A DNA stretch of 64,000 nucleotides. Source: Blepharisma stoltei ATCC 30299. Lineage: Eukaryota > Protista > Ciliophora. The notes below the pieces were generated by a model, which was not told the DNA's origin, ran no database searches, and saw only the letters and a list, made by a program, of their open reading frames with translations. Positions within the stretch are counted from its first letter, which is position 1; each line of letters opens with the position of its first letter. The position numbers and the translations under genes are program-made. The stretch covers positions 1 through 64,000 of the forward strand of contig CBFDEM010000023.1 in the NCBI GenBank assembly GCA_965603825.1, written 5' to 3'. Positions 5,157-60,862 of this stretch are shown here, piece by piece.

Positions 5157-8100
5157 ATGAACATAATAGAATTTTCTTTTATCATTGCAATTCTTGTGAG
5201 AAGTCAGATAGTTGTTGATATAGCCTGAAGCTCCTTCACAAATCCGAATTTCGCCTCAAATTTAACTGCTTTACTTCACCAAAATTTCCAAGATCAATTT
5301 GAATTTAACTTGGCTTATTTTGATACCTCTTCAACTCATCAACAGTTTCTGAACAGTCCAGATCTAATTTTTGATATTACCTTTAGTTCTTTTTTATCAC
5401 AAAGAATAAGAGAATACACTGCTGAAAATCCTACCATAATAGCAAGTATCAGCAAATCAATTGGCGCATATTCTGATTGAGAATTTTTTATTCACAATTC
5501 GTGGGAAAACCAAATTGAAGCTTTATCCAGTATCATTTCTTATTTGAACTGGACAACTTTTATAGTGATTTCTGATAAGATTTATAATGAAGATGATGAG
5601 TTGTTTTTTAATTGTTTTTCCAAAAAAGATTACCATTGATTTTATTTCGCAAATAGCAATGATAAAAATTCTTCGGACTTATTTATTGGAAAGGTAATTC
5701 AGGCGATCGGGATAAAAAACATTGTGATATTAAATTTTGGGGAAAGCACAAACTTGCTGCTAAAAAGCCTATCTCAGAAAAGTTTGCTCACTAAAGGAAC
5801 TGGAGTTATTGTAGGAAGTAAAGGCTCATGGGGTTTGTATGGAGATGGTATCATTGCTTATTCAGAATTAGGATTAGAAAGTGCTGATAGTTATTACAAA
5901 TATGAAGGATTAGCATTCATAAAATTTTTGAATTTAATACTCAGCTTTCCTTTAGCATCCAATTCTTTGGAGTTAATTGGGTTTTTAAACAAAAATACAG
6001 TTGATCATCATCCATTCCCAAATTTTACTCTATTAAATATCGAAGATAGTGAAAGATCAATCAAAGGAAAAATTTATAACGGAAATTTAACGATATCAAA
6101 ATCCCTGATCTATCCAGGGAATTCTTCAATTATTCCTAACTCCCCTACCACAGACATAAATATATGAATCGCAGATGGAACAATAAATCCAGGAGGTGAC
6201 TCTGATATATTGGCAACAACTCCAACAGCAGGAGCATTTTATGCTTTAAGCTATTGAAAAAGTATACATTCCTTGGATGGCTTTGAAGTCTCAGTAACTC
6301 ATACAGACTGTGGGGCTACAGTATTTGATTTGACTTATGCATACTCCTGCTTTTCTAAATTACTAGCAACTCCTGGTGTTGGATATCTAACATCTCTCTA
6401 TCCATATATAGCCATAGGTAACATTTTGGTATTAAGATCTTTGAATCTTTCAATACCCCACATTTCCCCTTATGCTCCTTCAACTCTTTCTCTTAATAAC
6501 ACCCTTTTCCCTGAGTTTATGACAATAATAAAAGACGAAGCTTTCAATACCCAGGTCATTTTAGATCTTGCAGTCATTTTTGGTTGGAAGCATTTTCTAG
6601 TCATTTATGATAAAAATAATTTAATGGCTTATAACTTTTTTCTATCAAAAGTCGAACAATATAACATGATCATTGCAAATGGCCCTGAACTGAGGCAAAT
6701 GGATGCATACTACACAAGAGACAAATATCCTCACTGAAAAGATTGATTTGCAAGTATAATAAGCTTGAAGGTCAGATTTTTAGTTGCATTTTTAACACCT
6801 CCTTACGGATTTCACGTAGCTGAAAGCTTCTATGATGCAGGGATTAGAAAAGGCGACATGATAATCTTATGCAACGCAAGAATGTCATATGCATTTGATT
6901 GAGAAACCGATTTGGTCCAGCGACGAAAAGTCACTGAGGTATTTTATGGTGCGATTGCTGTTGCCCAAGCTGAGTGAATTGGAGAATATGGACAAATGCT
7001 TGTAAGAGGCTATTTAAAGGAGTATGTAAACCAATTAGAGTTTCGCTGCTTAGCATTTGATTCTGCAATGCTACTTCTAAATAGCATCTCATTTACTATA
7101 AAACAAGGTGAAAATGTGAAGGATTATGAAATATTGAACGCAAACATAAGAAAACAAAAATTTTTAGGCTGCTCTGGGACTGTGTCAATTGAGCCGGGAA
7201 CTAATCAAAGAAGTTTGCCTACTTTCGGGATTTTCAGCTTAAGGTGAAATGATACTACTCAGAAGCTTTACGAAGAATCGGTGGGGTTGTATGATCTCAG
7301 CAGTGTACAATTAATTACTTTTTATAGCCAGATCTTATGATATGATAACACCACAAATCTGCCTTCAGATTTAATTATATATGAAAATGGCTGCCCATTT
7401 CCAGCTAAAATGATTCATAGGTCTAAAGCCGGTGCCGGTATGCTATATGGAATATCGATTGGGCTGATAGTTATCACGATTATTGAATCCTTTTTTATAT
7501 GAAATAAATTTTTAAAAAACATCAGAATACAGAAATTAAAAATATCTGCATATGTTCAGTTTGAAGATTACTTCATGATGGCAATTTTGGCTATAGATTT
7601 TTTCCAATTTATTTCTCAAGGACCTGATATAAGTGGATTACATGAATGGCTGTCCTTACTCTGCACCTATACAATGACTAACTTTGATTCTACCGTTACA
7701 GGTGATATTTATTGGGTTTATTTATATACTGCTATGGCTATTTCTTGCTTTTGAGTTTTTACAGCTTTTTTATTGCTTTATCAGCTTAATGAATTTTTTA
7801 GTGAAATGCTAAAACGCGTGAAAAATATTTCTTTACTTTTGCTTCCTATAATTGGAAATATAGTGTTTGTGCCAATGGTGTCAGTGCTCTTAAGCATTTT
7901 TCAATGTGATCAAGGAATTAGCTCAAAAATTACAGATTCTTTTATAAGATATGATTGCACTACATATTGCTGGGATAATAGGTATACTTTATGAGGAATT
8001 TTTGCAATTATTTCCTTGCTAGTTTATATTCCTTTAACTATTTATTTAAGATATTATTATGAAATTGTTAATGATCATATTAACATCAGAACGAATCCGA

Positions 8101-8627
8101 TTTTTATTATAGAAAAAGCAATCTGCCAAATAATTATTATTTTTATGAGCCGAACAGTCAAAGAGTATAACGAATCTTTGCACGGACTTTGTTGTTGCAT
8201 CCTTTTTATTACAATGATTCTGCTGTGCTATAAGCAAGGCCCTTATAATTATCATAGAATGAATCTTTGAATTAGTATTTCTTATCTGGCTATTCTATGA
8301 AGTTTTATTTTGTCAAGTACTTATTGACTCACAGAAATTGATAATAAATTAATTTTTATAGCTTTACAATGTTTAGGCTGGCTTATCTTAATAGCTTCAG
8401 GTATTGCTATTCAATGCAAGTGATACCCAAACCTATTGAATACTGAGAAGGTTGTTGACATTGCGATTTTTTTTAAATTTGAAATAGGAAATAAAATTAC
8501 AGCTGCTGAGCTCAATAGAATGAAAAAAGAGATAAGTAATTCAAACTACTCAACTAAAAGCAAAACATCAAATATAAATTGCACTCAAATTATTCCAACT
8601 ATTAACGATAATATTATATCAGAATAA
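5157..8627 (+). pseudogene. Receptor copy A (2x Venus-flytrap + multi-TM), full length but TAA at codon 4
   Basis: One frame from 5157 to 8627 with 18 in-frame TGA(W). ATG context agcaATGaa matches copy D. The only internal lesion is TAA at 5166-5168. Confidence 0.8.
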
Positions 8628-8749
8628 TTATTATAATTAAATTTTTAGATATCTGTAAACTCTAAGCTAAATATCTAGCAATTAATTCAATGAATTTTAT
8701 ATATTTTATATATTTTGAATATAATAATTTGTTTGAAGTCTATAGGTAT

Positions 8750-9596
8750 CTTAAATTGAGCAATATCATGTTTTGAACTTTTCTTTTTTCTTTCCTTTCC
8801 TATAGTGCCTCTTTATTGGAGCTCATAAAATGATTGCCAAAGAAAAGCATTATATAATCGCTTCCATTTACAAAACACTTGGCACATTCTAACTGAGAAT
8901 TGTTTCATACTCAATGGGTAGTCAGCTTGCCTCACTTATTATTTAAAATGAGAAAGATTAATTGTAATTTCTGATGACTTACTAAGATAGTGGATTTTGA
9001 AATTATTTTTCGAATAAGAATTATCAATGATTTTACTTCTCAAGCATCTATAAAGAAAGCTTGACTGATTAATTAATTGGAAAAATAGTTCAAGCCAAAT
9101 GGAACGAGAAATATTGTTATAATAAATAAAGCAGAAAGTGCAGTGTTTATAAAATCACAATTTCCATACTATTGGGCAGGAGTATTATAGGAAGTAAGGC
9201 TCGTGGGAGCCATGTGGAAATGGAGCTATTGGATATTCTAAATCTTGTCTTGAGTTTGCTGATGACTATTTTAATTACGAAAAATTAGCTATTTATGAAA
9301 TTTTATTTATCATTTACTTATTGACTCATTACTTTTGGTTATTCAGCATTGTGACTCATACTTAACGTTCTGGGTTTATCTTAATAGAGGCTGATATTAC
9401 AATTCAATTCAATGCCAAATAGCTTCCTAGTTTATTAGTTTTTGATAAAGCTGTAGATATAGCTAATTTTTTTAAATTTTTAATGGGAAGCCAAATGAGT
9501 AAGAAGGAGCTTATAAAAGCTAAAAGAGAAAAATTCAAATGCTAGTAATGAGTCTTGCTCTTCTTATTCTGATGGAAATGGTATAAAAGAATAATT
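8750..9596 (+). pseudogene. Internally deleted remnant of receptor family (5' piece fused to 3' tail)
   Basis: tatagtgcctctttat...gagctcataaaa and ggaaaaatagttcaagcc match copy B 5' sequence. From ~9310 it matches the family 3' end (DKAVDIA.FFKF). Many stops and indels. Confidence 0.75.
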
Positions 9597-10224: not shown

Positions 10225-12225
10225 ATGTCAGTATTCAAGTTTTTACGGATCATACTCTGTATGGCCATCCTTGCCAAATCTCAGCTGATTGTTAATATTA
10301 TTTATAGTTCTTTCACAAATCTAGAGCTTGCTTTGAAAATCTCTTCTTTGCTACTTCAAAACTTTCAAAGTCATATTGACTTTAATCTAACTTATATAGA
10401 AACCTCCGAAGATCTAAAGCTGGCTACAGATGCTTCAAATATAGTTTTTGGCCTTATCTATAGTGCCTCTTTATCTGAGCTCATAAAAGAGCTTGCAGAA
10501 GAAAAATATTTTATTATCGCTTCTATTGAAGAAACTTCGAGGACATACTCAGAGTGGCAATTTTTTATTCATAATTCTTTAAAGAATCAGATTGAAGCTT
10601 TGCTTTCAATTGTTTCCTTTTTAAATTGAGAAACATTTATTGTAGTTTCTGACCAAACTTATAGTGAAGATGATGGATTTTCAAATTATTTTTCTAATAA
10701 GAATTATCGGTTATTTTATTTCTCAAACAGTAATGATCAAAGCTTGGCAGATTTATTTATTGGAAAAATAGTTCAAGCCACCGGGATAAGAAATATTGTA
10801 ATTCTAAATAGAGGGGAAAGTGTAAAATTACTGCTAAAAAGCTTAGAAAAGCACAATTTTCTTAATATTGGGAGTGGAGCTATTATAGGAAATAAAGGGT
10901 TTTGGGGACTTTATGGTAACGGAGTTGTTAGTTACTGCGAATCGGGACTAGAATTAGCGGATAGCTATTATAATTATGAAGGTTTAGCATTTGTGAAATT
11001 TTTAAAACAGATTCTCAGTTATAGTTCAACATACAACTCTTTAACCCTCAAAGAGTTTCTGAATAAAAATACAGAGGATCATCACCCAGTGTCCAATTTT
11101 ACTCTAATTAATGCCAAAAATAATGAAAATTTTCTAGTAGGAAAGATTTTTAATGGAATCTTAACACTAATAAACCCTTTAGTATACCCAGGAAATTCTT
11201 CAAAAATTCCAAACTCTCCTACTACAGATATTAATATATAAATCGCTGATGGAACAACAAATCCTTTTTTTTTCTCTGAAAATTCAGCATTAAAAATTGC
11301 TTATGCAGAGTTTTATGCTTTAGGATTGTGGGAAAATAAGCATGTATTGGACAACTTTGAAATAAAAGTAGTTGATACCGACTGTGGAGTGTCAGTTTAT
11401 GATTATGATTATGCATATTCCTGCTTTTCTCAGCTACTCAATACTCCTGGAGTGGGTTTTTTAACATCTCTATATCCCTTTATAGCAATTGGATATATAT
11501 GCATTGAGGTCTTTAAATTTTTCAATACCTAGCATTTCACCATATGCCATATCAAGTCTATCGCAAAACAAATCATCTTTTCCTGAATTTATGACTGTAA
11601 CGAAAGACGAAAGATTTAACACAGGCGTTATCTTAAATCTTGCAGCAGTTTTCGGCTGGAAACATTTTATTATCATCTACGATGAAGATAATTTAGGGAC
11701 TTATAATTATTTTGTGGAAAAAATTGCAAAAAATAACATGAAAATTGCAAATAGTCCTGATCTTCGAACTATGGACATGTTCTACACTAGAAATGATTAT
11801 CCCAAATGAAAAAGCTGATTTGCTAAAATAATTAGCTTAAAAGTGAGACTTTTTTTTATCATTTTAACCCCTCCCTTTTGATTTTATATAGTTGAAAGTT
11901 TTTACGACGCAGGATTAAGAAGGGGTGACGTTTTATTTTTATCTGATGCAAGGATGGCTTATTCTATTTTTGGGAAACTGATTTAGTTCAACGAAGAAAA
12001 ATTATTGAGCTACTGCATGGTACAGTTATAACTGCCCAAGGCGAATGGATTGATGAGTATGGACAAAAAATAAAAAATGGGTTTATTAAAGAATATGGAA
12101 ATGAGACAGATTTCGATGCTTAGCATTTGATGATACAATGCTGCTTCTAAATGGAATAGAGTTTACTATAAAGCAAGGCCAAAACGTGAAGGATCACCAA
12201 GTAATGAATGAAAATCTTAGAAAAC
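10225..12225 (+). pseudogene. Receptor copy B, 5' ~660 codons, nonsense and frameshifts, truncated by retroelement
   Basis: Signal peptide and both VFT domains align with copy A. TAA at 11239-11241 where paralogs have TGA(W). Frameshifts near 11497, 11970 and 12116. Homology stops at ...NLRK (12225). Confidence 0.85.
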
Positions 12226-13008
12226 TTACTTAATTATTCAGCAGGCAATGCCTGCAGCAAGAACCTTATGGTTCTTTTTTAACTAACCATCTATCTATTT
12301 TAAGCTGCTGCGATTTATCACTTCGGCCCAAGAGTCTATCTTCTCTCTCTTTCATTAACCCATGTCGCTTTGCTCTTGAGACCAACACCTCTTCATGGAA
12401 AACTTTGATTGCCTTGTCTATTTCATCTATGCTGTGCGTCTCTTCATTCTCGTAACGCCAGTTTAATAAGCTCCGTTCAAGCCGGTGACTATAGAGGATT
12501 ATTTCAGCCAACCTGATTTTTTCACATGGGTAGCTAATCTGCTCCAACCTTTTTTTCAGCTTATTTCTCTGCAGAGCATATTGTGGACAGATTTCAATTA
12601 TGTGTTCTTCTGTTTCCTCTTCATAACACACTTCGCATTTTGCTGACTGTGCTAGGTGCCTAATCCATGCATTGTGATTACTAAAATTAAACCCAGCCCT
12701 TAGTCTGTGGATTGATCCAATTGCAAGATGCCTGTCAGGGTTGTGTTTTATAAACGTCGGGGTATAGCTATATTCAGCTTCTTCTTTCAACCATCTTCAT
12801 ACCCTCGTCGTTTTCTTTGTCTCTAGTTCTAGCCTGTTTACAATTTCTCTCAAGTTGCATTCGCTCAGTTTACCTTCCAAAATTTGGTCTCACTGCTCCT
12901 TCTTAGTGTTTAATATTCTCTCGTCTTCCAAGAATTCGTCTAAGTTAAGATCCCTTATGAAGCGTTGGCATTTTCGCTCTCAAGGAAGGATCTCTTTAAT
13001 GTTAATGA
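12226..13008 (-). mobile_element. 5'-truncated non-LTR (LINE-like) retrotransposon, ORF2 C-terminal CCHC region plus 3' UTR
   Basis: Open frame from ~13005 to 12266 (TGA=W): PWERKC...RLRAGF...CEVC...ETEEHIIEICPQY, the typical post-RT Cys/His motif. Higher GC than flanks. Short 3' UTR ending ...AATAATTAAGTAA. Confidence 0.85.
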
Positions 13009-15938
13009 TTTATTTATAGGAAAAGCAATTCAAGCCAGTGGAATAAAAAATCTTGTGCTATTAAATAGAGGGGAAAGCGCTGAATTGCTATTAAAAAGTT
13101 TAGTAGAGCAAAGTTTGCTTTCTCTTGGAACTGGAGTTGTTGTTGGAAGCGAAGGTTCGTGAAGTTTAAATGGAAACGGAGTTATTGCTTATGTAGAATC
13201 AGGATTAGAAAGTGCTGACAGCAATTTCAATACTCTTATGAAGGTTTAGCATTCATAAAATTCCTGAATCTAATGATTAACTTTTCTTCAAAGCCTGACC
13301 CTTTTGACTTACTCGAATTTTTAAATACAAAAACAGTCAATCACTATCCTATCTCCAATTTTATGCTTCTCAATACAGTAAATAACATAAATGCTGCAGT
13401 CGGAAATATTTTTAATGGAAATTTGACTATACTTAATTCTCTTACCTTTCCAGGAAATTCTCCAAATATTCCGAACTCTCCAACGACTGCAGTCAATATA
13501 TGAATGGCAAGTGGAAACACAAATTGGATGTCATCTCCTGATGTTGTAGTGCATGAACTAGCAATTGCGGAAACGTTTGCCCTGAACTATTGGAAAAGTA
13601 CACATGCTTTAGAAGGTTTTGAAATAACAGTAACTAACACTGATTGTGGGGCGTCTGAATACAATGCTACCTATGGGTATTTCTGCTTTTATAATTTACT
13701 TGCTACTCCTGGCGTTGGCTATTTATCATCACCATACCCGTACATAGACTTGCCTACATCTATACATTGAGAAGTTTAAACGTTTCTATATCCCAGATTT
13801 CTCAATACGCTCCTTTTGCAAGTTTGGAAAACCAAACAAACTTCCCTGAGTTTATGAGAGTTGCAAGAAGTGATAAGTACAACATACAAGTTATATTTAA
13901 TCTCTGTGTGATTTTTAACTGAAAAAATATTATGGTTATATACGACGAAACAAGCTCTGATAGCTATGAGTATTTCGTTGCAATGGCTAAACAATTTAAT
14001 GTGGAAATTGTAAATAGTCCGAAATATAGATTGATTGACACTTACTACACAATGGATATGTACCAGGAGTGAAAATGGTGGTTTGAAGGCAATGTAAACT
14101 TAAAGGCTAGACTTGTGGTGCCTTTATTGATTCCTCCTTATGGCTTCTATGTAACTGAAAGTCTTTATGATACAGGAATGAGAAGAGGCGATATTATTGT
14201 CCTCTCTAATTCTCGTATTGCCTATTCTTTACAGTGACTAAATGACCCTATCCAAAATAAAAAAATAATTGAAATGTTTGATGGAGCAGTTATCGCTACA
14301 CATGAGTGAATTGGAGAATATGGAGAAATGCTAAAAAAGAGTTCAATAGGCATTATTCTAATTCAACAGATTTTCGTTGTTTAGCATTTGATTCTGCAAT
14401 TCTTCTTTTAAATGGAATAAAATTTACTATACAGCAAGGGCAGAATACCAAAGATTTTCAATCCATGAATATCAACCTAAGGAAACAGAGGTTTGCAGGG
14501 TGTTCTGGACAGTGTCAATTGAACAAGGAAGTAGCCAAAGGCTCTTGCCTAGAATTGGGATTTACAACATAAGACTGGATACTACGACTCAAAAATTATA
14601 TGAAGTACTGGCAGCACAACTTTGATTTCTTTATTTAGTGAGATCCTCTGATTTGACTCTACTACTGTAGTGCCAACTGACTTTATAATATATGAAAATG
14701 GGTGTCCTTTCCCAAAAAAAGCAATTTCTCATTCAGAAAAAGGTTCTGGGGTGTTCTATGGAATTTCAGCTGCTTTTGTCGTCTTCACAGCTTTATATTG
14801 TTTTTGAATCTGGAACAAATGGTGGAAAAATATAAAAATTGAAAAATTAATAAATTCTTCGGCTGCTCAGTTTGAAGATTATATTCTCATGGCAGTCGTG
14901 GCAATTGACTTTTTTCAATTCATTAGTCAAGGTCCGGATATTGGCTGGCTATTTTTTTGGCTGTCTAGAATATGCTCTTATTCAATAACAAATTTTGATT
15001 ATTCTGTTGGCAAAAGTAATTATTGGATTTATTTGTATACAGCCATGATAATTTCTTGCTATTGGGTTTTTTCAGCTTGCGCATTGATTTTTAATTTAAA
15101 TAAGCTTGATGGCTGGCTATTGAAGTATGTTAGAATTTTTGCTACTCTTTTGTTGCCTATAATTGGAAATATCGTATTTGTGCCTATGGTCTCAGTTTTT
15201 TTAAGTATTTTTCAATGCGATGAAGGAACCAGCAATCAAATATCTGATTCTTTTATAAGACATGATTGCACTACTTATTGCAGAAATCACAAATATATTT
15301 TATGAGCATTTTTTTCATTAATTTCGCTGATCATGTATATACCTCTGTCTATCTATTTTAGATATCATTATGAGAATAGTAATGATCACATCAATATACG
15401 AACAAAACCAACTTTTATTTTACAAAAATCAGTTTTACAGATCAGTATCATTGCTATGAGCCAGACCATAAAAGTATATAGCCAATCCTTGCATGGTCTT
15501 TGCTGCAGCATACTTTTACTTATATTTATTTTATTATGCTTAAAGAACAGTCCTTATAATTATAGTCGCATGAATTTTTGGGCAGTTACTTCATATTTTG
15601 GAGTTTTATATAACTTTATTCTATCTTCAATTTATTGACTTACAGAATTTGAGTCCCAAGAATTATGACTTAGTCTTCAAATCTTAGTTTGGGCTACCTT
15701 AGGGATATCTGGTATTTTAATCCAATGAAAACTGATTCCAAGCTTACTTTTGACAGCTCAGCCACCAGATATCGCGATTTTTTTTAGATTTTCATTGGGT
15801 GCTAGAGTCTCAGCTGCAGATATTAATAAACTGAAAAAAGAAATTGTCCAAATTAGTGACATGGGTGAAGAAAAATTGCCAAATCTTAAAAGCCAAACCC
15901 GCTTTTCGATTGAAAAGGATGACCTAATTTCAGAATAA
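13009..15938 (+). pseudogene. Receptor copy C, 5'-truncated near-identical duplicate of copy D
   Basis: Collinear with 19112-22060. Indels near 13225, 13750, 14303, 14335, 14510 and a ~20-nt deletion near 14605. Lacks the first ~170 codons. Confidence 0.85.
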
Positions 15939-16649
15939 AATTACTTTTAGTGATAACATTTATTAGTTTGTAATTTCCAAATAATAATTATAATGCGAAT
16001 ATAAGCACTTCTACTCATTTTGATTATCTTATTTTCAAATAGTATAAGAAAAATCATTCTGAGTATTTATAATTTATTTAATGATTCCTTAATCTTGATT
16101 ACAAAGAAAAATTAAAATCTCTCCTTTTAAAGCATTTTTTTAAAATTAATTATTTTGCATTATATTGAAAAGTAGCCTAATATTATTCATCTCATATAGT
16201 CTTTTTCAATTCAAATTATTTATTAGCATCTTTTATATGAACAGTAATTTTTTTGATTATGATATACTCAACAATTTATCTATAAGTCTTGCTGTTCCTT
16301 GATCACATATAGCTAACTTTATATTGCCATAAATTTATTGAGGTCTGAGGTGTAAAAGTAAAGCTGTTTGCTTTTCTGCGAGCTCAATAATTTGAATTCT
16401 TTGTAATTAGCCTCCCTTTTATCGTTGATGAAGCCGATTTATTTATTTATTTGAACTAAATATCAATAGAAAATTCGAGTTTTCTAACTCTACCCTCAAT
16501 CCTTGATTGCATCATCAAATTCATTGGGTTTAAAATTTTTTGGGTCACGTGTGGGTTTCATGATTACTTTATCAAAGCGCTCAACCAAAGGTCTAATTTC
16601 CTGATTTTTTGGCAAATTTTATGATCTTCTCGTTTGGTCATGGCTCAAA

Positions 16650-16930
16650 AAATTTGATACCATGGTATTTTGGTTTTAATGCAATACTCAGTCTGGCTTT
16701 TCTTGACAGTAGCTGGAATGATAACTCAATAAAAATGGCATCCTATTTGATTATTAACTGATAAGGTAGAGATATAGCATATTTCTTTACGTTTCAAATG
16801 GGAAGACAGGCATCTGTAAAGAAATTAACAAAATGAAAGGGGAGATTGAAGAAAATATAGATAAATAGCTGTAAATATTGACGATCAATCTATTTCTTCA
16901 AGCTCAAGATTGAATGTACTGTTAGATTTT
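16650..16930 (+). pseudogene. 3' remnant of receptor family
   Basis: Matches the last TM and tail (gtagatatagcatatttctttac..ttcaaatggg). Paralogous to 22757-23040. Confidence 0.65.
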
Positions 16931-17254
16931 GTTAGCTGAAGGAATTTTAATTATATTTAAAATCAATAAATTTTCAGTTAAATTAATTATAGATTTAAGA
17001 TTTTACTTTTAATTTAGGTAGCATGCCATTTGGCTTCGTTTTTTTAATCTTATTTTAATATATTCCAGATTTGATTAATTCTATCATTTATTGGTTTTTT
17101 AGTGTTAATTCTAAACTATTCTTTATCAAATAATCTTGTCTTGTAGCAGTTATTATATTTAGCATTTATGTTAAGCAATTAGAGTTTTGGCTTCAGCTTT
17201 AAGCAGCGGTTCCTAAGAACTTAGAATCAGAAAAAGCAAACTATAGATTTCCTA

Positions 17255-17765
17255 CATTAACATAAAATCAAAGCCCCTTTTTATTATAGAAAAAACTATT
17301 ATCCAGCTTCTCATCGTTGTTTGAATAAAACTTCAAAACCCTTTGATGAGTCTTTGCATGGTCTTTTCTGCATCATCATTTTTGTATTAATACTTTTTTT
17401 ATGCTTCAAGCAAAGCATTAAAATTATCAGAGGGCAAATCTTTGGCTGGCTATTTCATATATAGCTATTTTATGGAATTATTTTTCTTTATTGACTACAC
17501 GTTTTACTCTCAAATGTTATGGCTTGTGCTTCAATTCTCAGTGTGGTATCTCTTAGCAGCAGTTGGTATTACCATTCAGTGTAAGCGATTTCCAAGCTTA
17601 TTACTTGCTGATAAAGTCGTCGACATAACCATTTTTTAAAAATTTTCAATGGGAATCAAATTAGTGAGATGGAACTTGTAAAAGCTTAAAAAAATATATA
17701 GAAAACAAAGAAGAAGGTTCTGAGAATTTATCACATTCATCTCAAGATAATATTTTTAAGAATAA
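17255..17765 (+). pseudogene. 3' remnant of receptor family
   Basis: IKSKPLFIIEK..., gatgagtctttgcatggtc and GITIQCKRFPSLLLADKVVDITIF are recognisable. Frameshifted. Confidence 0.7.
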
Positions 17766-23903: not shown

Positions 23904-26900
23904 ATGATTTTGGCTATATTGCTTATACATATAGCATCCTGCTTGCTACCAGTTTTTATTGCAATAAGCCAATATAGCAGTCAAAACATGATTAACCAAA
24001 TTATTGACTCTTTCCAAAGTTCTGCTTTAAATTTCACAGAACTGAAAGTATCCAAAATAAGCCAGGAGGATCCTCTTGACAGCTTTATGGGAGAAAGCAA
24101 GATTATAATCGATGTCACTTGCAATCTCTTATTACAAGTAAAGCTTCCTGAAGCTGCAAAGTTAAATTCTTTTGTCCATATAATAGTTCGAGAACCATTT
24201 GAAAAATTTTCTGATTGGGACTATTTTACGCTGTTTCCGATACAAGCTCACTACGAAGCTTTAAATAGTTTTTTACTTTATTTTAATTGGTATCAATATA
24301 ATTTGATTCATAGTGATTCAGCGAATGCAATTAATCTCAGCAGTCTATTTTATAGAGATATAAATAAAAAGCAGGACTTCTGCTATTCAAATGATAGAAA
24401 CGAGGATGCCGCTAATTATTTTATTGGGAAAGAGGTAAAAACTACAGGATTAAAAAATGCTGTTATTCTAAATGAAGGAGAAGGAGTAAAGAAGTTGATA
24501 AGGTCATTAGTAAAAAATAAAATTTACATTAAAAATGCAGGAATAGTATTATAAAGCAAAGGCATATGAGGGGCAGAAGAAGAAGGTCTTATCATTATAG
24601 TGCAAGAGAGTCTTGAATTTGTAAGAAATTCAGATGAATATGAAATTGCTTCAGTTTTAAGTTTTCTTGAAAAAATATATATGCTATCAGAATCAAACTT
24701 TGTAATTAAAAAATACTTAGAATCAGAAAGAGCAAACTATAGATTTTCTATTGTCAATATTCAAAATGGCAAGAGAGTAATAATTGGAACAATTTTTAAT
24801 GGTCAAGTTAATCTATTCAAAACTCCACTACTTCCAGGAAATGCATATGATTTTCCTGATTCAAGCAATTCAAAGATAAAAATATCAATTTCTGATGGCA
24901 TTGCAAACTATGATGGGGTTATTCACAGAGGCACTTGAATTATAAGGATTCCAACGCTATACGCAATCAATTATGCGAACAAAACAAACCTAATTAAAAA
25001 TTTTTCATTAGAACTGCATGAAACTGATTGCAGTGCAGAGTATTATGAGCACGATTTTTCATATAACTGCTTTTTAAAGCAGAAAGTAAACTTTGGAGTC
25101 GTTTTTATACCTTCAATTCATGATGAAGTATACTTAGGGACTATTAGTGATTTCAGAGAAATGGGATTAAAAATTCCCGTACTTGGGGATTTTTGTCTTT
25201 ATCCTGCTCTTAATGACCAAATTCAATTCCCTGAATTTGCCCGGGTGGTAAAAGGTTTTGAGCTCCATTCCACCACAATGAGGATTTTCGGTTGGAAAAA
25301 TGTGGTTGTCATGTATGAAAACACGACCTTAGGAATTACCCTATACAAAGGGTTTATGAATGTAGCAAATGTAAATGGGATAAAAGTCCTAAATGATGAA
25401 GATAAGAGGATGGTCAAGGCTTCTTATTCTCTTAAAGATTTTGAAGAATATAAAGGCTATCTTACCCATGCGATCCAAACAAATGGAAGAATATTTGCCC
25501 TTTTCGTATTTGTTGATCTTTCGAGCCATTTCTATTTAACATCCCACTTATATGATTTAGGATTGAGAAGGGGGGATGCTATTTTTTTGTTGTACCAGAC
25601 TGTTTCGTGGTTTCCCTACTATGCAGTTGGCTTAGAAGCAGAAGTTATTTCTAAATGTGAAGAGTTATATTATGGATCACTAACTTTTTTCCAAGCTGAG
25701 TGGGTTGGAGATTTTGGGAAGCAAGCTTATGAAGGCATCAAAAAGTAATGGGGTAATTCTCCTGTGTCTTATCATTGCCACGCTTTTAACACTGGGTGGC
25801 TAGCTATAAATGCGATTAATACTTTAATCCAGTTTGGAGAGGACTACACAGACCGTGACACTCTTTTAAGATCAATCAGGAGGCAAAAGATCATCAGCTG
25901 ATCTGGAAAATTGGTAATGTCACCTAGTGCAAATGAATCTGAAGAAATGATCGTGGGCATTAGCAACCTGATATCTAATTCTACAACTGGGTTATGGGAA
26001 GATTTTCCAGTCGGATCTTATTCAATTGTGAGAAATCCAGTGCTGACTTTTGACCAAAATATTATTTGGCCTGATGGTGGAACTCAACCTTCTACTGATA
26101 TCAGAATAAATTGGCTTAATTGCCCATTTTCCTATAGGCAGATTCAAGACTCTGACAAAGGGGAAGCTATATATTATAGTATCATTGCATTTTGGACTGC
26201 TTTAGGTTTGGCAACATCATTAATTTATATATCAAAGTATTGGAGCTTATCGTTTCCTATCATTCAGGATAAGAGGGAAATAAAATTCCGAGATTGATTA
26301 GCTGTTTTTAGCTTATTGATAGAGACCTTACAGCTTTTAGCTTTAAGTCCTGAATTTATTCATTCAAAAATTTCTAATGGTTTTGATTATATATCAGGAA
26401 ATTTAGCAAATACCACAACATATTACAGTAAAATTTTCTGACCAGGAATTTATACAGCCTTAATAGTCTGCTTGGTGATGCTAATTTTTAATCTGTTATT
26501 AATTTTTAAAATTGAAGAGAAAAGCAGACTCTCTTTTTTAGTAGTAGCTTGCGGGATTGCAAAAGAGCTGCTGCCACATATTAGCAACTTATTTTTCATC
26601 TCTGTCATAAATTCTCTGTTTTCTCTATTCAGATGCACAAAAGGAACAAGCCTGAATGTCCTTGACTCATTTTTATATGGCGACTGCAATTATTTCTGCT
26701 GAAAAGATTTACACTTACTTTTTGCAGTTCTTGCTTTAATTTCCTTGCCTTTTTTTATTCCTAGTGCAATCTTATGGAGACCTTATTATGAATCTCTTAG
26801 CTCTGATAAAAATATTTATTGCAATGAGCATTATTTAATCGCAAAAAGCATCATTCAAATAGTTGCGATTACTTTAAAATCAACTATAGGGAATTACAGT

Positions 26901-27326
26901 AACTCCTTGTATAGTCTTTTATATATTTTCTGTCTCACACTTTTTTTAGCTTACTCCATTTTCTATAAACCTTACAATTATAATAGAATGAACTTATGAG
27001 CCCTACTTTCAATTCTGGCAGTAATGTGAAGCTCAATTTTATCATCTATTTATTCATTAGCTAACAGCAGCATCTTTATATGAGTACATTTATTAAGCTT
27101 CGGCTGACTATGCTTAGCTGTTTTTGGGTATGCTTTTCAGGAAAGATTTTATCCGAACTTTTTGTACTCCGTGCAAGGTAAGGATATCAGCTTGTTTTTC
27201 AGGTTTGAATTTTCAACAAAAATTAAGCCAGATGAAGTTTCTGAGGCTGTGAAGAATAAATATTCAGTGATAGACTCCAGCAGTCGATTTGATTCAGCTA
27301 ATAAGGATTTGAGTTTTATAAGTTAG
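23904..27326 (+). pseudogene. Divergent receptor copy E, full length, two in-frame TAA, no frameshift
   Basis: Single frame from ATG 23904 to TAG 27324-27326. TAA at 24552 and 25746. Same architecture (TDC, FPEFARV, IFGWKNVVVMYE, QAEWVG, NCPF, LFRC...DC.YFCW, KPYNY). Confidence 0.8.
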
Positions 27327-27699
27327 TTATAGCAAGTCAACATATTTATAACAATAGGTAAATAAATAAATTTGTGAAAATTAGAGCTTAACGATTATTT
27401 AAGATTATTTGAAGCTCTGCTATTTCAAATAAGTATTTTTAATCTAATCTTAGTTCGTTCAGCTGCCTCCTACTGTGTATCCCAGTCTCTCATTAGATCA
27501 GAGGATATTGGAATGTTCATCATGTTATGTGCCAAACAAGATTGAACTTACTGAAAATCCTAAAAACTAACTTTATTCAGCATTATCCATGAGTCTTAGC
27601 TCGTTATTCCTTCAGGTAATTATTTCAGTTTTTCTTTAGTATCAATGGTAAAATTAATATTAAAAAAATCAATTTATTATAAAAGCTTTTTTTCAAGCA

Positions 27700-28615
27700 A
27701 TTATCAAGAGCTTGCAGCTACTCACTGGTTAATTTTGATAATTCTGTTAAAGGAAATTTTTTCTGAGATTAGTTGTATTTTGCTCAGACAATTTCATGCT
27801 ATTGAATAACTGCCATATTTATTTTGTATTTTAAGTTATCTAAGGTTGATTGTGAGATATTGAGACACGCCAGAATCTCGCCTTGCTTTTACTTCCAATT
27901 ATTGGAAATATTTTATTTGTCTCTATAATTTCAGTACTTTTAAGTGCTTTTCAATGTGATCAAGGACTTGGCTCAAATATTACTGATTCTTTTATAAGGC
28001 AAGACTGCAGTACGTATTGCTGGAATAATAAATATTTTATATGAGGAAGTTTCTCAATAGTTTCTTTAGTTGCCTATAAAAAACGCAGCAAATTTTTATT
28101 CTAGAAAAAGTTATTTTTCAGATAATAATTGCTTCTATGAATAAAACATTAAAAATTTATGATGAGTCTTTGCACGGCCTTAGCTATATTATCCTCATCT
28201 CTATAATGATTTTGTTAAGCTTTAAACAAAGACCTTATAACTATAGCAGAATGAATATTTGGTTGATAATTTCATATTTTTGAATTTTATGGAGTAATAT
28301 TTTATCATCACTTTATTGGTATAAAAAATTCGAATCATTAATGATGTGGACTTTACTTCAATATTCGGTATGATTTTGCTAAATATCAGCTGGAATTCTA
28401 GTTCAATGAAAATTTTCCCAAGTTTATTGATTACTGAAAAAAGAATTGATATAGCAATTTTTTTCAGATTTTCTTTAGGCAGTCAAATTTCAGCTATAAA
28501 AATTAATAAAATGAGAAAAGAAGTCATAGGAGATACTTTTATCAACGGAAGTTTTCTAAATATTTATTCTAGATCTAGTCGTTCGAATTCTTAAGAAAAC
28601 ATAATATCAGAATAA
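27700..28615 (+). pseudogene. 3' half remnant closely related to copy F
   Basis: gcttgcagctactcactggttaattttgat and tttttattctagaaaaag are nearly identical to 32490-33453. Stops, frameshifts and an internal deletion near 28080. Confidence 0.8.
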
Positions 28616-29199
28616 TTTTTATGAAAATTAATTTAGCTTCTATTAATTTCTTAATAGATTAAAAATTGAGAGTGATTTTTAGAAAACAATCACCAGACAA
28701 AGTTAAATGACAATTATTATTTCTTCTTCATTTATTTAAGGTAAATAGCTGAAGACCTTAGTAATATGGCAGAATTATATTATCACAATTAATAGGATCC
28801 ACGGAATTGAAAATTACCTAGCAGGATAGTTATAAATTTCGAATTTGAGCAATATATATAAATCAATCATGAACGTTCCTCTTCTCATTTTTATGTATCA
28901 AAGTAATTATATTTTAACCCTTTTGTTAAATCAACAAATTTATTTTTTTAGCAACTTTTACAAGTTGGCGTTCGGGAGAATCAGAATCAGAAATGTTTAT
29001 CATTATTTTCTTCCGTTTTAATCATTGCTAATTCCAATAATTCTTGACTAAAATGGGAATAACTTTATTCATTTTAAAAAATTATTATGTCTTATCGCAC
29101 TTTAAACATAAATAGCGATATTTGATTGGTTGAAGTAAAGAAACTACTAGTGTCAACACTAAATCATGATAAGATTATTAATGAAGAAGTATTTCTTAT

Positions 29200-29370
29200 T
29201 TCTATGGCTATTTTTTGCAAAATATATTATATTTTTAACGCTATTATGAGTAAAATTATAAAGATTTCATAAAACTTTGCATGAGCTTTGCTGCATTACC
29301 TTATTTATCATACTAATTGCTTTATGTTTTAAAAATAAACCTTGCAACTATAACAGAATGAATTTAAAAT
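29200..29370 (+). pseudogene. Small highly decayed receptor TM6-7 remnant
   Basis: ctttgcatgagctttgctgcatt and aaaccttgcaactataacagaatgaattt correspond to LHGLCCI...KPYNYNRMN. Confidence 0.55.
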
Positions 29371-30036
29371 TATTATAATATTTTTATAAAAGGTTATATA
29401 ATATAAAACTAATTCAATTTTAAACCTATTTTCCTGGTTATAATTGTTTCTTTAAGTAAAATATTTATAATTTGTGAGAGTTTTGCATAATATCTAAAAT
29501 GACATTATTGAGTTTCAAGTAAAACCCTTATAGCTATTGCTGAAATGAATTTTTCATTATTATTTCGTTTTAGAATTTATTATCATATCATCTATTATTG
29601 ACCTTAAGAAAGTGGAATGCTCAACCTACTTATGCAATCTTACAGGAGAGAAGGGAAGAATTTGTTTAAAAGAGTGAAGGTTAGCTGTGAAATTTATAAA
29701 TTCGAAGCAATTAGCAATGAAATGAATGAAGCCTGGATAGTTGGCGCAGTATTTGACGCTAAGCGAACGAGCTATTGGCTAATTAGTACTAATTAAATAC
29801 AATTATGGCTCGATTTTAATATTTGATAATATTTTAATATAGATGACTTACAAGCTTGCTGATTATTGAAAAATTGGTTGCCATTTCAAATTTTTCATAT
29901 TTTAATAATAAAATTTTTAAATTTGATTTTATTATAGATCGAACTAAACTAGGCTGGCAGCTCAACATAGGGCCTAAGTAGAATTAAACATTTCTAATTA
30001 TTAATATTTATCTCTTATCTTTTAATGTCCTAATAA

Positions 30037-33000
30037 ATGTCAATTATTCTGTACATAATTTGAAATTCTTTCACAAATCTCAGCCTGATTTCAGACATAA
30101 AAGCTCTAATTGATCAAAATTTTCAAGATCAAGCTGATTTTAGCCTTGTTTTCTCTCAAAATCTTTCAGGTTCCCATCTTACTGCAGGTAGCCAAAATAT
30201 CATTTTAGATCTCGGTTTCGACTGATCACTATCAAAATCAATAAAAGAGTTTGCTGAAGAAAACCAAGCCATAATAATTAACATTCATAGGTCTATTGGA
30301 TCTTTTTCAGAATGAGAATTTTTTACGCATTGCTCATGGAAAGACCAAAGTGAAGCGCTTTTTATTGTTACTACTTATTTAAATTGGCAAAAATTTATAG
30401 TGATTTCTGATGAAATTTACAATCAAGATGATGAATTTTTTAATTTATTTTATGATAAAGATTATCAGTGGTATTTTTTTTCGAATTGCAATGATGAGAA
30501 CTCGGCAGATTTGTTTATTGGAAAAATTATTCAGTCTATTGGTATTAGAAACATTGTGATATTAAATAAAGGTGAAAGTGCAAGATTGCTTTTGAAAAGC
30601 TTAGAGCAGCATAATTTCTTAATAAATGGTACTGGAATAATCGTAGGAAGTGAGGGCTCATGAGGGTTATATGGAAATGGAGCTATTTCTTATGCGGAAT
30701 CAGGATTGGAAAGCGCTAATAGTTACAATAGTTATGAAAGCCTATCAATTATTAAATTTTTAAAGTTAGTATTCAGTTTTCCTCCGGCTTCAAGCTCATT
30801 AGAATTACTTGAATTTTTAAACAAAAACACTATTAACCATCATCCAATCTCCAATTTTACGCTTCTCAATATGGAAAATAATAAAACTATAGGAAAGGGG
30901 AGCATTTTTGATCGAAATTTAACAATATCAAATCCCCTAAATTTTCCAGGAAATTCTTCAATCATCCCGAATTCTCCAACCACAGATGTAAATATATGAA
31001 TTGGAGATGGCACAAAGAACCCAAACTCTCCTTCAGATCCTTCATCAACAAGATCAATGCTAGGAGAATATCTAGCTTTAAGCTACTGGAAAAGCTTGCA
31101 TGCTTTAGATGGTTTTAACATAACAGTAACTCATACAGATTGCGGGGCATTAGCTTATAATGCAACTTTAGGGCTTTCTTGTTTTTCTAACCTTCTTGCT
31201 ACTCCTGGAGTAGGCTATTTAACTTCACTTTATCCTTTTATTGCTATTGGCTATATTTATACATTGAGATCTTTAAACTGCTCGATACCAAATATTTCTC
31301 CATATGCCCCTTCAAATCTTTTGCAGAATCAAACATTGTTTCCTGAGTTTATGACAGTAACCAAAGACGATAGATTCAATATTCAGGTCATCCTAGATCT
31401 TGCAGTTGTTTTTGGATGAAAAAGATTTATAGTAGCTTACGATAAAGAAAATATAGAAAGTTACAAATATTTTTTAGCAAAAATCGAGCAGTTTAATATG
31501 GAAATCGTAAATAATCCTGACCAAAGAATGATAGAGTCATACTATACCGTAGATAAATACTCAGAATGGGAAAATTGGTTTAAAAGCATAATCAGCTTAA
31601 AAGCTAGACTTTTTATTATTTTTTTTGCGCCTCCTTATTGGTTCAATGTAGTTGAAAGTTTTTATGATGCAGGTCTAAGAATAGGGGATTCCATTTTTTT
31701 ATTTAATGCAAAGGTGGTTTATTCTATGATTTGGGAAAAGAACCCAAAGCAGCTGAATAAGCTTATAGAGATATTATATGGAACAGTTATCATAAACCAA
31801 GCTGAGTGAATTGGAGATTTCGGAAAAACAATGAAAAGAGATTATATAATAACTTATGGTAAATCTACTGATTTTCGTTGTTTAGCATTTGATGCTGCAA
31901 TGCTGCTTTTAAATGGAATTGAATTTACTATAAAGCAAGGCAAAAATGTGATGAATTATGAAATAATGAATAGCAGTTTAAGAAAACAGAAATTCTTAGG
32001 ATGCTCTGGGACTGTATCAATAGAGCAAGGAAGCAATCAGAGAAGTTTGCCTACAATAGGGATTTATAATATAAAATGAAATAATAGCGCCCAATCATTA
32101 TATGAGGACTTTGTTGGTAAATATGATGCTAGCAGTGTGCAATTGATTACTTTATATAGCAGCATTATATGATATGACAATACAACAATAATTCCAACTG
32201 ATTTAATAATATATGAAAATGGCTGCCCGTTTCCTGAAAAATTAATATTTCGGTCTGAAAAAGGAGCTGGAATTTTATATTTGATTTCAGGCTCATTAAT
32301 AATTATTACAGCAATTGAAGCACTTTTTATATGAAAAATGTTTTGAAAAAATATTAAAATTGAAAAATTAAAAAATGCAGTCCAAGCTCACATTGAAGAT
32401 TATTTTTTAATGGGAATTCTGGCTGTAGATTCTTTGCAATTTATTTCTCAGGGGCCTGATATTCCTGAATCATTTTTGTGATTATCAAAAGCTTGCAGCT
32501 ACTCACTGGTTAATTTTGATTCTTCTGTTAATGGAAATTTATATTGGGGTTACTTGTATATTGCTCAGATTATTTCGTGCTATTGAGTTATTACAGCATT
32601 TATATTGATTTGCAAGTTATTTAATATTAATTCTGCGATACTGCAATACGCCAGAAGCCTCGCCTTACTTTTGCTACCAATTATAGGACACTTTCTATTT
32701 GTCCCTATAATTTCAGTTCTTTTAAGTATTTTTCAATGCGATCAAGGGGTTGATTCAAATATTACTGATTCTTTTATAAGACAAGACTGTAATACGTATT
32801 GCTGGGATAATAAATATTTTATATGAGGCAGCTTCTCAATAGCTTCTTTAGTTACCTATATCCCTCTTTCTATTAATTTCAGGTATTTTCATCAAAACAT
32901 CAATGATTATATAAACATAAAAATGAAGCCAATTTTTATTCTAGAAAAAGCTATTTTCCAGGTAATAATTGTTTCTATGAATAAAACATTAAAAATTTAC

Positions 33001-33453
33001 GATGAGTCTTTGCATGGCCTTTGCTGCATTATCCTCATCTCTATAATGATTTTGTTAAGCTTTAAGCAAAGACCTTATAACTATATCAGAATGAATATTT
33101 GGTTGATAATTTCATATTTTGGAATTTTATGGAGTTTTATATTATCATCACTTTATTGGTATACAAAATTCGAAGCATTAATGATGTGGACTTTACTTCA
33201 ATATTCGGTATGGTTTTGACTGATAATAATTGGAGTTTTAATTCAATTTAAATTTTTCCCAAGCTTATTGCTTACTGAAAAAGCAGCTGATATTTCAATT
33301 TTTTTCAGATTTTCAATAGGTAGTAAAATTTCAGCAATAGAAATTAATAAAATGTTAAAAGAAATAAGGGATAAAACTATGTTCAAGAGCAGCTATTTAA
33401 ATATTGATTCTCAATCAGGTTCGAATTCTAAAGATAATATCATACCAGAATAA
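30037..33453 (+). CDS. Receptor copy F, open 1138 aa but lacking the signal peptide
   Basis: Continuous frame with TGA(W) to TAA 33453. ATG 30037 is preceded by in-frame TAA TAA and starts at about the mature N-terminus (MSIILYIIWNSFTN). Confidence 0.75.
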
Positions 33454-33943
33454 TATTTATAATAGTTAAAAAATACCATTAATAGTTTGTTTTAACACTT
33501 TTTGATCACTTGCTGAGAACAAACTTTTTTCAAAAAATTTATATATTGCTTTTTCTAAAATTCCACTAATTAAACTTTAAATTAAACTGGTTTGCATAAT
33601 GTATGTCTTGGAATGCAAGCTTCTTATGCTAGAGATTTTATATTATAATTATCAATATAGGAATTAAACATAAAATATTTTTTATTATTTTTCTCTCTCT
33701 ATCTCACGATGGAGAGTAATTCAATTAGTGACATAGCGGTATAGTAAAACCTTATAAATAATAAATTTATTTGGAGTTAGTATAATTAAGATGTGCTCTA
33801 ATTCGTAATTAAATTGAATTTTAATTATGGATTATTTAGAAGGTGCTTGAATTTTTTTATGAGAAATTAAAATTTAATGCCCTAAGTTCAATCCAAAACT
33901 TTAATTTTGGTGTCTCTAATTAATAAATTTTTAAAAATAATTA

Positions 33944-35623
33944 ATGAAACTTTTAAAGATTATTCTTTGTGCACTTATTCTTATCGAAAGCCAGATGGTG
34001 GTTGATTTTATTTATAGCCCTTTTAGTGATTCAGAATTTGCTTCAAATCTGACTTTTTTCGTGAAGAAAAACTTTCAAGACCACCAATTTATTTTCAATT
34101 TGATTTATATTGCCACCATCGAAGATATACAAAAAATCTCATATAGCCCTGATATAATTTTTGACGTTACCTTTAGCCTCTCATTATCAGAATCCATAAA
34201 AAATCTGGCAGAGGAAAAGCATGTCATAATTGCCTCAATTAATAAACCGCTTGATTTTTTTTCTGACTGAGAATTTTTTGTCCATAATTCCTGGGAAAAT
34301 CGAGTTGAAGCCTTGCATGGCATTATTTCTTATTTAAATTGGCAAACTTTTATAGTGATTTCTGGCGAGATTTACAATGAAGATGATGAGTTTTTTAATT
34401 ATTTTTATGATAAAGATTGCCAATGGTTTTCTTTCTCAAATAGCAATGATAAAATATCAGCTGATTTATTCGTAGGGAGAGAAATACAATCGACTGGGAT
34501 TAAAAATATTGTGATCCTAAACCATGGAGAAAGCACAAAATTGCTTTTGGAAAGTTTAGAAGAGCATGATTTGCTTACTAATGGGACTGGGATCATTATA
34601 GGATGTGAAGGCTCCTGAAATTTATATGGGAATGGGATTATTTCTTATGTAGAGTCTGGATTAGAAAGCGCTGACTGTTATTATTGCTACAAAGGGTTAG
34701 CTTTTATTAAATTTTTAAATTTAATATTAAGCTTTCCTTCAACATCTGATCCTTTTGCACTCCTTGAGCATTTAAATAAAAATACAGTTAGGCATCACCC
34801 AGTGTCTAATTTCACTTTAATAAATACAAAAAATAGGCAAAAAAGTATTACAGGAACAATTTTAAATGGAAATTTAGAAATATTAAATCCTCTGGTTTAT
34901 CCAGGGAATTCTTTAATAGCGCCGAATTCTCCTACTACAGATGTCAATATATGAATCGCAGATGGAACAATAAATCCAGGAGCTGAACCTGAATTATTGG
35001 CAACAACTGTGACATATGGAGAATTTTATGCCTTAAGCATCTGAAAAAGCATGCATGCCTTAGATGGCTTTGAAATCACAGTCACTGATACAGATTGCGG
35101 AGTAACCACATATAACGCAGATTATGCGTATTCATGCTTTTATAAACTACTCCCAACTCCTGGCGTCGGCTTTTTAACATCACTTTACCCATGAATCACC
35201 ATGGGATACATTTATACTTTAAGAGCTTTAAATTATTCAATACCTCACATTTCTCCTTACGCTCCTTCAATCATTACAGAAAACAATACAGCTTTTCCAG
35301 AATTCATGACAGTCATAAAAGATGAGACTTTTAACACCCAAGTCATTTTAAATCTTGCAGTAATTTTTGGATGAAAAAATTTTGTTGTTATCTATGATGA
35401 GACAAATATAGCCATGTATAATTATTTTGTTGCAAAATTAAAAGAATTTAATATGAATATCGTTAATCCGCCTGAATTGCGAAAAATTGATACTTATTAT
35501 ACGAGTGTTAACGGCAGAAAAGTTAGCCTCCATCCCCCTATTATCCCCTATATTCCCTATCCCCCCATACTTTCCGTTCCTCCCTGTGCACCATTAATCT
35601 TTATAGGAGCTCATGCTTTTTAA
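33944..35623 (+). CDS. Receptor copy G, intact 5' half (signal, VFT1, half of VFT2) fused to an unrelated Pro-rich tail; no TM domain
   Basis: 559-codon open frame (TGA=W). Family homology ends abruptly at DTYYT (~35503). May be a pseudogene. Confidence 0.65.
35534..35566 (-). other. Canonical G-quadruplex-forming motif G6-N3-G3-N6-G4-N6-G5
   Basis: Plus strand reads CCCCC TATTAT CCCC TATATT CCC TAT CCCCCC. Confidence 0.7.
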
Positions 35624-60853: not shown

Positions 60854-60862
60854 CTTAATTTG

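What the first reader, a model, noticed from the sequence alone, without database searches (positions are those of the whole stretch)
5157..35623. 30-kb tandem array of an unusual double-Venus-flytrap, ~9-TM receptor family: candidate ciliate chemoreceptor repertoire
Seen: seven long same-strand paralogs and about six remnants. Each full copy has a signal peptide and two successive domains carrying the ANF_receptor/PBP-I pattern. The first is EFFIH.S.ENQ.EAL.SII.YLNW..FIV; the second is TDCG...IP.ISP.A.S...FPEFM...FGWK.F.VIYD...GCSGTV. A W.D...P.D...CPF linker follows, then ~9 hydrophobic helices with IDFFQ, FQC..DC..YCW and PYN motifs. Known: Venus-flytrap domains bind amino acids and their derivatives in class C GPCRs, iGluR N-termini and receptor guanylyl cyclases, usually one per chain. 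Inference: no cyclase or kinase tail and no obvious 7tm_3 signature is visible, and the TM block looks more like the protist TRP-like/TmcB-like membrane module. This may be an undescribed sensor architecture evolving by birth-and-death like animal chemoreceptors. Blepharisma responds to a Trp-derived pheromone (blepharismone) whose receptor I do not know to be identified, so these are speculative candidates.
Basis: partly seen in the sequence, partly recalled or inferred. Interest (0 to 1): 0.85.

Follow-up and report, generated by a model that had tools for sequence, protein, structure and literature searches.

The report
Double-flytrap, nine-helix ciliate receptor array
This chromosome-end stretch of the ciliate Blepharisma stoltei holds part of a large gene family, already noted in the genome paper, whose surface proteins turn out to carry two ligand-binding 'flytrap' domains on a nine-helix membrane part that is not a G-protein-coupled receptor, making them untested candidates for the cell's chemical sensors.

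Summary
The array is real. The genome is the B. stoltei macronucleus (TGA=Trp). Of seven long copies, only three are uninterrupted ORFs (5157, 18593, 30037), and the third lacks a signal peptide. Three are broken. The seventh is cut at 35505, where this contig leaves sequence it shares with Contig_1 (99.99% over 9983-35505); on Contig_1 the array runs to ~205 kb. Both Venus-flytrap (VFT) domains are confirmed: VFT2 by Pfam and fold (Z~35), VFT1 by a GluN1-ATD profile hit (7e-9). The 9-helix module is not 7tm_3, matches no solved structure, and is remotely PF06011 (Flc/Pkd2 'TRP')-like. Paralogs show dN/dS 0.2-0.3. The family is not undescribed: the Singh et al. 2023 supplement (PMC9942806) reports the Contig_1 cluster, 81+143 ANF_receptor proteins with 7-9 TM, Stentor-only homologs and eroding pseudogenes. 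Not found in the literature searched: the second VFT and the PF06011-like identity of the membrane module. Best reading: a G-protein-independent chemosensor repertoire. The scan found this family before on other B. stoltei contigs.

The parts
1..3035 (.). Telomere, CCCTAACA repeats; the array is subtelomeric
5157..8627 (+). Copy A: intact 1156-aa ORF (leader, VFT1, VFT2, 9-TM, short tail); 18 in-frame TGA read as Trp
8827..9542 (+). Remnants: VFT1 piece and C-terminal TM piece
10225..12266 (+). Copy B: pseudogene; TAA at 11239, three frameshifts, truncated near the end of VFT2
12269..13009 (-). Dispersed repeat ORF fragment (31 genomic matches) with a CCHC-like motif; resembles the 3' end of a non-LTR retroelement (inferred, no Pfam hit); sits between the cut ends of B and C
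12998..15938 (+). Copy C: 5'-truncated, frameshifted recent duplicate of D (96.8% nt)
16607..17708 (+). TM-module remnant
18593..22060 (+). Copy D: intact 1155-aa ORF with hydrophobic leader
22410..22953 (+). TM-module remnant
23904..27326 (+). Copy E: divergent (27-29% to A/D/F), full length but with in-frame TAA at 24552 and 25746; 89% aa to an intact paralog on Contig_1, dN/dS 0.22, so recently inactivated
27700..28622 (+). TM-module remnant, 84-86% nt to F
29262..29402 (+). Small TM remnant
30037..33453 (+). Copy F: intact 1138-aa ORF without signal peptide (= P0028, annotated in NCBI/UniRef as a B. stoltei receptor ligand binding region protein); used for the AF2 model
30037..30972 (+). 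VFT1 of F (aa 1-312): degenerate PBP-I Venus-flytrap domain
30982..32172 (+). VFT2 of F (aa 316-712): class C GPCR/LIVBP-type Venus-flytrap domain
32257..33255 (+). Nine-helix membrane module of F (aa 741-1073), PF06011-like, no solved structural relative found
33944..35505 (+). Copy G: first ~520 codons only in this contig; intact (1156 aa) on Contig_1
35505..35506 (.). Junction where identity to Contig_1 ends (mis-join or recent subtelomeric translocation)

Best explanation
A heterotrich-specific family of cell-surface sensors: leader, VFT1, VFT2, a short Cys/Pro linker, a nine-helix PF06011(Flc/Pkd2)-like module and a short cytosolic tail. SHOWN computationally: the architecture, at least ~145 copies in tandem arrays, purifying selection on all three domains, and frequent pseudogenisation. 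INFERRED: VFT2 binds small solutes (amino-acid-like or other metabolites) in its cleft, with different specificities in different paralogs. Cleft closure moves the linker and switches the membrane module, which signals without a heterotrimeric G protein. The most plausible output is cation/Ca2+ permeability as shown for S. pombe Pkd2 (about 0.3 of this reading), or else a membrane or cytosolic partner. VFT1 is more degenerate and probably serves for assembly or allostery, like an iGluR amino-terminal domain. Copies are born by tandem duplication and die by point mutation, frameshift and rearrangement near chromosome ends.
For: VFT2: Pfam ANF_receptor above cut-off in 8 of 8 full-length homologs; profile hits T1R/mGluR at E 1e-18; fold Z 33-36 to GABA-B, mGlu, T1R2 and LivJ/K. 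VFT1: profile hit to the GluN1 ATD at E 6.7e-9; 29 of 59 members hit ANF_receptor at E<=0.1, best 2e-11; VFT1-VFT2 HHalign 89.6%. All 88 homologs over 1000 aa carry VFT1+VFT2+TM. TM module: 9 helices; ESM-atlas TM-score 0.62 and 0.47 to PF06011-bearing clusters; HHalign 93%, E 2.8e-7, to PF06011-matching B. stoltei proteins, against 0.1% reversed, 0.5% for 7TM-RGS and 5-61% block-shuffled. dN/dS 0.20-0.34 in 20 paralog pairs. No G-alpha over the Pfam cut-off in the genome. Pkd2 has 9 predicted TM and passes Ca2+ under membrane stretch.
Against: The amino-acid-binding Ser/Thr positions of mGluRs are not conserved (mapped from alignment and my own knowledge). Extra variability in VFT2 cleft-side loops is only a trend: p=0.08 over nine strands, dN/dS 0.29, no positive selection. 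PF06011 does not hit the family directly, and the family TM HMM missed the strongest PF06011 matches. Channel activity of PF06011 proteins rests on few studies.
Confidence: 0.55

Rival explanations
1. Protein- or cell-recognition surface repertoire: receptors for gamone 1, prey or self/non-self cues, or variable surface antigens. The VFT dimer would clamp a polypeptide as natriuretic-peptide receptors do (own knowledge), or act as a structural or mechanical spacer.
For: Large, subtelomeric, fast-turnover arrays. The small-ligand motif is not conserved. Other PF06011-like B. stoltei proteins carry Cys-rich ectodomains. The gamone 1 receptor is still putative.
Against: Purifying selection everywhere, with no hypervariable surface found. 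Deep lineages are shared with Stentor and environmental contigs.
Confidence: 0.2
2. Transceptor or uptake system: the VFTs capture a solute as bacterial LIV-binding proteins do, and the Flc-like module imports it.
For: VFT2 matches LivJ/LivK as well as it matches GPCR VFTs (Z 33-34). Flc1 is described as regulating flavin transport (abstract).
Against: No solved transporter fold matches the TM module. More than 140 divergent paralogs fit a sensor repertoire better than a transporter.
Confidence: 0.12
3. Highly diverged class C GPCR with two extra helices.
For: Best whole-chain Foldseek hits are GABA-B and CaSR.
Against: Those hits are driven by the VFT (whole-chain rmsd 10-25 A). The TM-only model has no Foldseek hit at E<=0.001 and best VIA Z 7.3 on partial helix bundles. 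No 7tm_3 hit. The genome's three 7tm_3 matches are separate ~430-aa genes without a VFT. No G-alpha over cut-off.
Confidence: 0.03
4. Mostly decaying duplicated sequence, and the window's copy is an assembly artefact.
For: Four of seven long copies are broken in this contig. The first 35.5 kb duplicates the start of Contig_1 at 99.8-99.99%. The paper reports low coverage (74x vs 185x) across the Contig_1 cluster.
Against: This could explain the duplication and the truncation of G, but not the family: dN/dS 0.2-0.3, 26 full-length ORFs in the cluster, and conservation in Stentor.
Confidence: 0.1

Closest known systems
B. stoltei orthogroups OG0000085/OG0000014 (Singh et al. 2023 PNAS, SI; PMC9942806)
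   Same: Same family and same cluster: ~220 kb with 53 genes on Contig_1, central ANF_receptor domain, 7-9 C-terminal TM helices, only Stentor among ciliates, eroding pseudogenes.
   Different: The paper notes one ANF domain, does not identify the TM module, proposes no function and reports no selection test for it.
Class C GPCRs (GABA-B, mGluR, CaSR, T1R)
   Same: VFT2 fold and a VFT joined by a short linker to a multipass membrane domain.
   Different: Two VFTs; nine helices with no 7tm_3 homology; no canonical G-alpha found in the genome.
Fungal Flc/Pkd2 'TRP' family (PF06011) and protist Ephrin_rec_like + TRP proteins
   Same: Nine-helix module after an extracellular domain; remote profile and predicted-fold similarity.
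   Different: No direct PF06011 hit; tandem VFTs replace the ML/Ig-like domain; large paralog expansion.
iGluR/NMDA and plant GLR channels
   Same: VFT1 resembles the GluN1 amino-terminal domain; two stacked clamshells over a membrane domain.
   Different: The second clamshell is PBP-I, not the PBP-II S1S2 domain; no Lig_chan hit.
Uncharacterised ~1460-1500-aa proteins with ANF_receptor/Peripla_BP_6 + Ephrin_rec_like, some chlorophyte (ESM Atlas clusters)
   Same: VFT-bearing large eukaryotic proteins with similar language-model features (0.87 and 0.79, lead only).
   Different: They have extra Cys-rich repeats; their TM module was not checked. They suggest VFT + PF06011-like fusions may not be ciliate-only.
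Bordetella BvgS / E. coli EvgS
   Same: Tandem VFT domains in one sensor chain.
   Different: Bacterial histidine kinases with PAS and kinase output; unrelated membrane part.

Membership tests
OG0000085/OG0000014 (Singh 2023) | Lies in the Contig_1 terminal cluster; ANF_receptor domain; 7-9 C-terminal TM | tested here: met
   Window 1-35505 equals the start of Contig_1. The orthogroup gene list itself was not retrieved.
PBP-I / Venus-flytrap (PF01094) | VFT2 has the bilobed PBP-I fold and ANF_receptor above cut-off | tested here: met
PBP-I / Venus-flytrap (PF01094) | VFT1 is homologous to PBP-I | tested here: met
   Profile level and alpha/beta pattern in the model; VFT1 was not fold-searched alone
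PBP-I / Venus-flytrap (PF01094) | Binds a ligand in the interlobe cleft | not testable with these tools
   Pocket positions are variable
Class C GPCR | 7tm_3 heptahelical domain | tested here: not met
Class C GPCR | Heterotrimeric G-alpha partner encoded in the genome | tested here: not met
   only partial sub-cut-off matches; the search is exon-wise, so a very divergent G-alpha is not excluded
iGluR/GLR | PBP-II ligand-binding domain and Lig_chan pore | tested here: not met
   No such Pfam hit on full-length homologs or TM parts
Receptor guanylyl cyclase | Single TM plus kinase-homology and cyclase domains | tested here: not met
   Nine TM and a ~65-aa tail
PF06011 Flc/Pkd2 TRP-like | Nine-helix membrane domain | tested here: met
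   compared
PF06011 Flc/Pkd2 TRP-like | PF06011 HMM match above cut-off | tested here: not met
PF06011 Flc/Pkd2 TRP-like | Remote homology or same predicted fold | tested here: met
   HHalign 93% over helices 5-9 with controls; TM-score 0.62. Both are indirect, through PF06011-matching protist proteins.
PF06011 Flc/Pkd2 TRP-like | N-terminal ML/Ig-like domain | tested here: not met
   The ectodomain is two VFTs
PF06011 Flc/Pkd2 TRP-like | Ca2+ permeability | not testable with these tools
   needs reconstitution

The most novel reading that the evidence does not exclude
These are a new class of ligand-gated ion channel: tandem class C-type VFTs gating a Pkd2/Flc-like 9-TM pore, expanded to more than 140 genes as the heterotrich chemoreceptor repertoire, with one clade detecting the Trp-derived gamone 2.
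Probability: 0.2. Interest if true: 0.9.

Novelty: new variant of a known kind. Interest (0 to 1): 0.55.

Why it matters
The ciliate chemosensing and Blepharisma gamone papers read here do not identify the receptor genes involved. This family was counted in the genome paper but left uninterpreted. Two VFTs on a non-GPCR, PF06011-like nine-helix module give a concrete, RNAi-testable candidate repertoire in Blepharisma and Stentor. It also offers a ligand-gated route into a membrane fold with no solved structure found here. The value lies in the family; this window adds only a partly decayed duplicate of a published cluster.

Tried and rejected
Genetic codes 1, 6 and 15: no full-length ORFs; TGA read as sense gives them. 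Tiny introns as the cause of the breaks: no frame-restoring 15/16/19-nt GT-AG at the breaks checked. TAA read-through as Trp: the stops in B and E replace Trp, but 16 stops across the cluster fall on 10 different residues, which is ordinary decay. 7tm_3, iGluR pore and cyclase: not found. Solved-structure match for the TM module: none. Direct HMM link from the family TM to the best PF06011 loci: none; only the C29/30/35/39 group links by profile-profile. Positive selection in pocket loops: not seen; variability trend p=0.08. Canonical G-alpha: none over cut-off. Main-text literature searches found no functional study; the description was only in a supplement.
Full report
ORIGIN. The window starts with 3 kb of CCCTAACA telomere and belongs to a 41.46-Mb, 64-contig assembly. 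Long ORFs appear only when TGA is read as sense. Database proteins identical to copy F and to its paralogs are labelled Blepharisma stoltei. All of this matches the B. stoltei ATCC 30299 macronuclear genome of Singh et al. 2023 (PMC9942806).

OBSERVATION. tblastn and HMM scans find seven long + strand copies and five to six remnants between 5157 and 35505. Three are uninterrupted ORFs: A (5157-8627), D (18593-22060) and F (30037-33453). F lacks a hydrophobic leader and has two TAA codons just upstream. E is full length with two TAA codons. B is frameshifted and 3'-truncated. C is a 5'-truncated, frameshifted duplicate of D at 96.8% identity. Between B and C lies a minus-strand fragment of a dispersed repeat with 31 genomic matches; it looks like a non-LTR retroelement end, a class known in this MAC genome, but that label is my inference. 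No tiny intron explains the breaks, and stops across the cluster hit ten different residues, so these copies are pseudogenes.

RELATION TO CONTIG_1. Window 1-35505 is nearly identical to the start of Contig_1 (99.8% for 1-9982, 99.99% for 9983-35505). On Contig_1 copy G is intact and the array continues to ~205 kb with 23 more full-length ORFs, G included. The sequence after the junction includes a kelch gene family whose copies often lie near contig ends. The window's array is therefore either a mis-joined duplicate or a very recent subtelomeric translocation; I could not test this with reads.

ARCHITECTURE. VFT2 (F aa 316-712) passes the ANF_receptor cut-off, matches T1R and mGluR ectodomains, and superposes on GABA-B, mGlu, T1R2 and LivJ/K at Z 33-36. 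VFT1 (aa 1-312) is more degenerate. Its profile hits the GluN1 amino-terminal domain at E 6.7e-9, half the members hit ANF_receptor weakly, it aligns to VFT2 at 89.6%, and the AF2 model shows the alternating strand/helix pattern at high confidence. All 88 homologs over 1000 aa have VFT1, VFT2 and the TM module, including two Stentor coeruleus proteins. The membrane part has nine long helices (pLDDT 93, pTM 0.90), and four cysteines are invariant across the TM alignment, linker included. It has no Pfam or PDB sequence hit, no Foldseek hit and best VIA Z 7.3. Its nearest predicted structures are protist clusters carrying PF06011 'TRP' (TM 0.62 over 294 residues). Its profile aligns over helices 5-9 with PF06011-matching B. 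stoltei proteins at 93%, above reversed, unrelated and block-shuffled controls. It is thus PF06011-like but not a member by cut-off. The genome's 7tm_3 matches are three separate ~430-aa genes with an RGS-like tail and no VFT (RGS identified by eye), and no G-alpha passes the cut-off.

EVOLUTION. Lower bounds of 143 VFT2 matches and 150 TM matches genome-wide, a handful of them the C1/C23 duplicates, sit mostly in tandem arrays. Twenty paralog pairs give dN/dS 0.20-0.34, similar in all three domains. E versus its intact paralog gives 0.22. VFT2 loops after the core strands, taken as cleft-facing from standard PBP-I topology rather than measured on coordinates, vary more than the loops before them (0.57 vs 0.43); VFT1 shows no such asymmetry. 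Across the wider alignment this is a trend only (p=0.08), and there is no sign of positive selection. Named homologs come only from Blepharisma and Stentor; the rest are environmental contigs. Atlas clusters are Ciliophora, with a weaker lead to larger VFT + Ephrin_rec_like proteins, some chlorophyte.

MECHANISM. The best reading (0.55) is a surface sensor repertoire: VFT2 binds a solute, its closure is passed through the short Cys/Pro linker to the nine-helix module, and signalling is G-protein-independent. The output may be Ca2+ or cation entry, as reported for nine-TM S. pombe Pkd2. Architecture, copy number and selection are shown; ligand binding, gating and output are inferred. Rivals are protein or cell recognition (0.2), solute uptake (0.12), decaying or artefactual sequence (0.1) and a diverged class C GPCR (0.03). 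Nothing here links any copy to blepharismone. The gamone 1 receptor is still called putative in a 2024 paper.

NOVELTY. The supplement of Singh et al. 2023 already describes this cluster and family: 53 OG0000085 genes in ~220 kb of Contig_1, 81 + 143 proteins with a central ANF_receptor domain and 7-9 TM, homologs only in Stentor (29), and eroding pseudogenes. The array, its size and its taxonomic range are known. I found no report of the second VFT, of the non-GPCR PF06011-like membrane module, or of any function (the library misses many subscription papers). Earlier notes of this scan describe the same family on other contigs and call it undescribed; that part is corrected here. Verdict: new variant of a known kind, interest 0.55.

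LIMITS. VFT1 was not fold-searched alone. AlphaFold DB was unavailable for a direct comparison with Pkd2/Flc. Signal peptides were judged by hydropathy.

Noticed in passing
window 35505/35506: Abrupt end of 99.99% identity with Contig_1, inside copy G. The same 11-mer occurs here (35501) and just inside the telomere (3183), possibly by chance. Candidate mis-join or subtelomeric translocation.
   Followed up: partly
window 12269-13009 (-): Non-LTR-retroelement-like fragment with 31 genomic relatives at the breakpoints of copies B and C; may have mediated the deletion.
   Followed up: partly
L024-L026 (G000 C57:710934, C3:327093, C34:173942): Three ~430-aa intronless genes match 7tm_3 and end in an RGS-like domain, although no canonical G-alpha was found in the genome.
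   Followed up: partly
Contig_1 37663-52975 and 160587-166951; also C29, C30, C35, C39: A second large family of ~2400-aa Cys-rich proteins is interleaved in the array and ends in a PF06011-like membrane module remotely related to the VFT family's module.
   Followed up: partly
window 36439-37400: Kelch-repeat gene family whose copies cluster near the ends of several contigs (C4, C13, C32, C35, C36, C39, C54).
   Followed up: no
window 51140-53253: Tandem pair of S1/P1 nuclease genes (Pfam E 1e-49).
   Followed up: no
window 46747-62581: Ordinary neighbours: amino-acid transporter (46747-47994, -), HAD hydrolase (48195), GAF-domain protein (50001), arrestin-like protein (61532); weak O-antigen-ligase-like hit at 57275. 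The ARAGORN tRNA-Gln call at 50298 lies inside a coding ORF and is doubtful.
   Followed up: no
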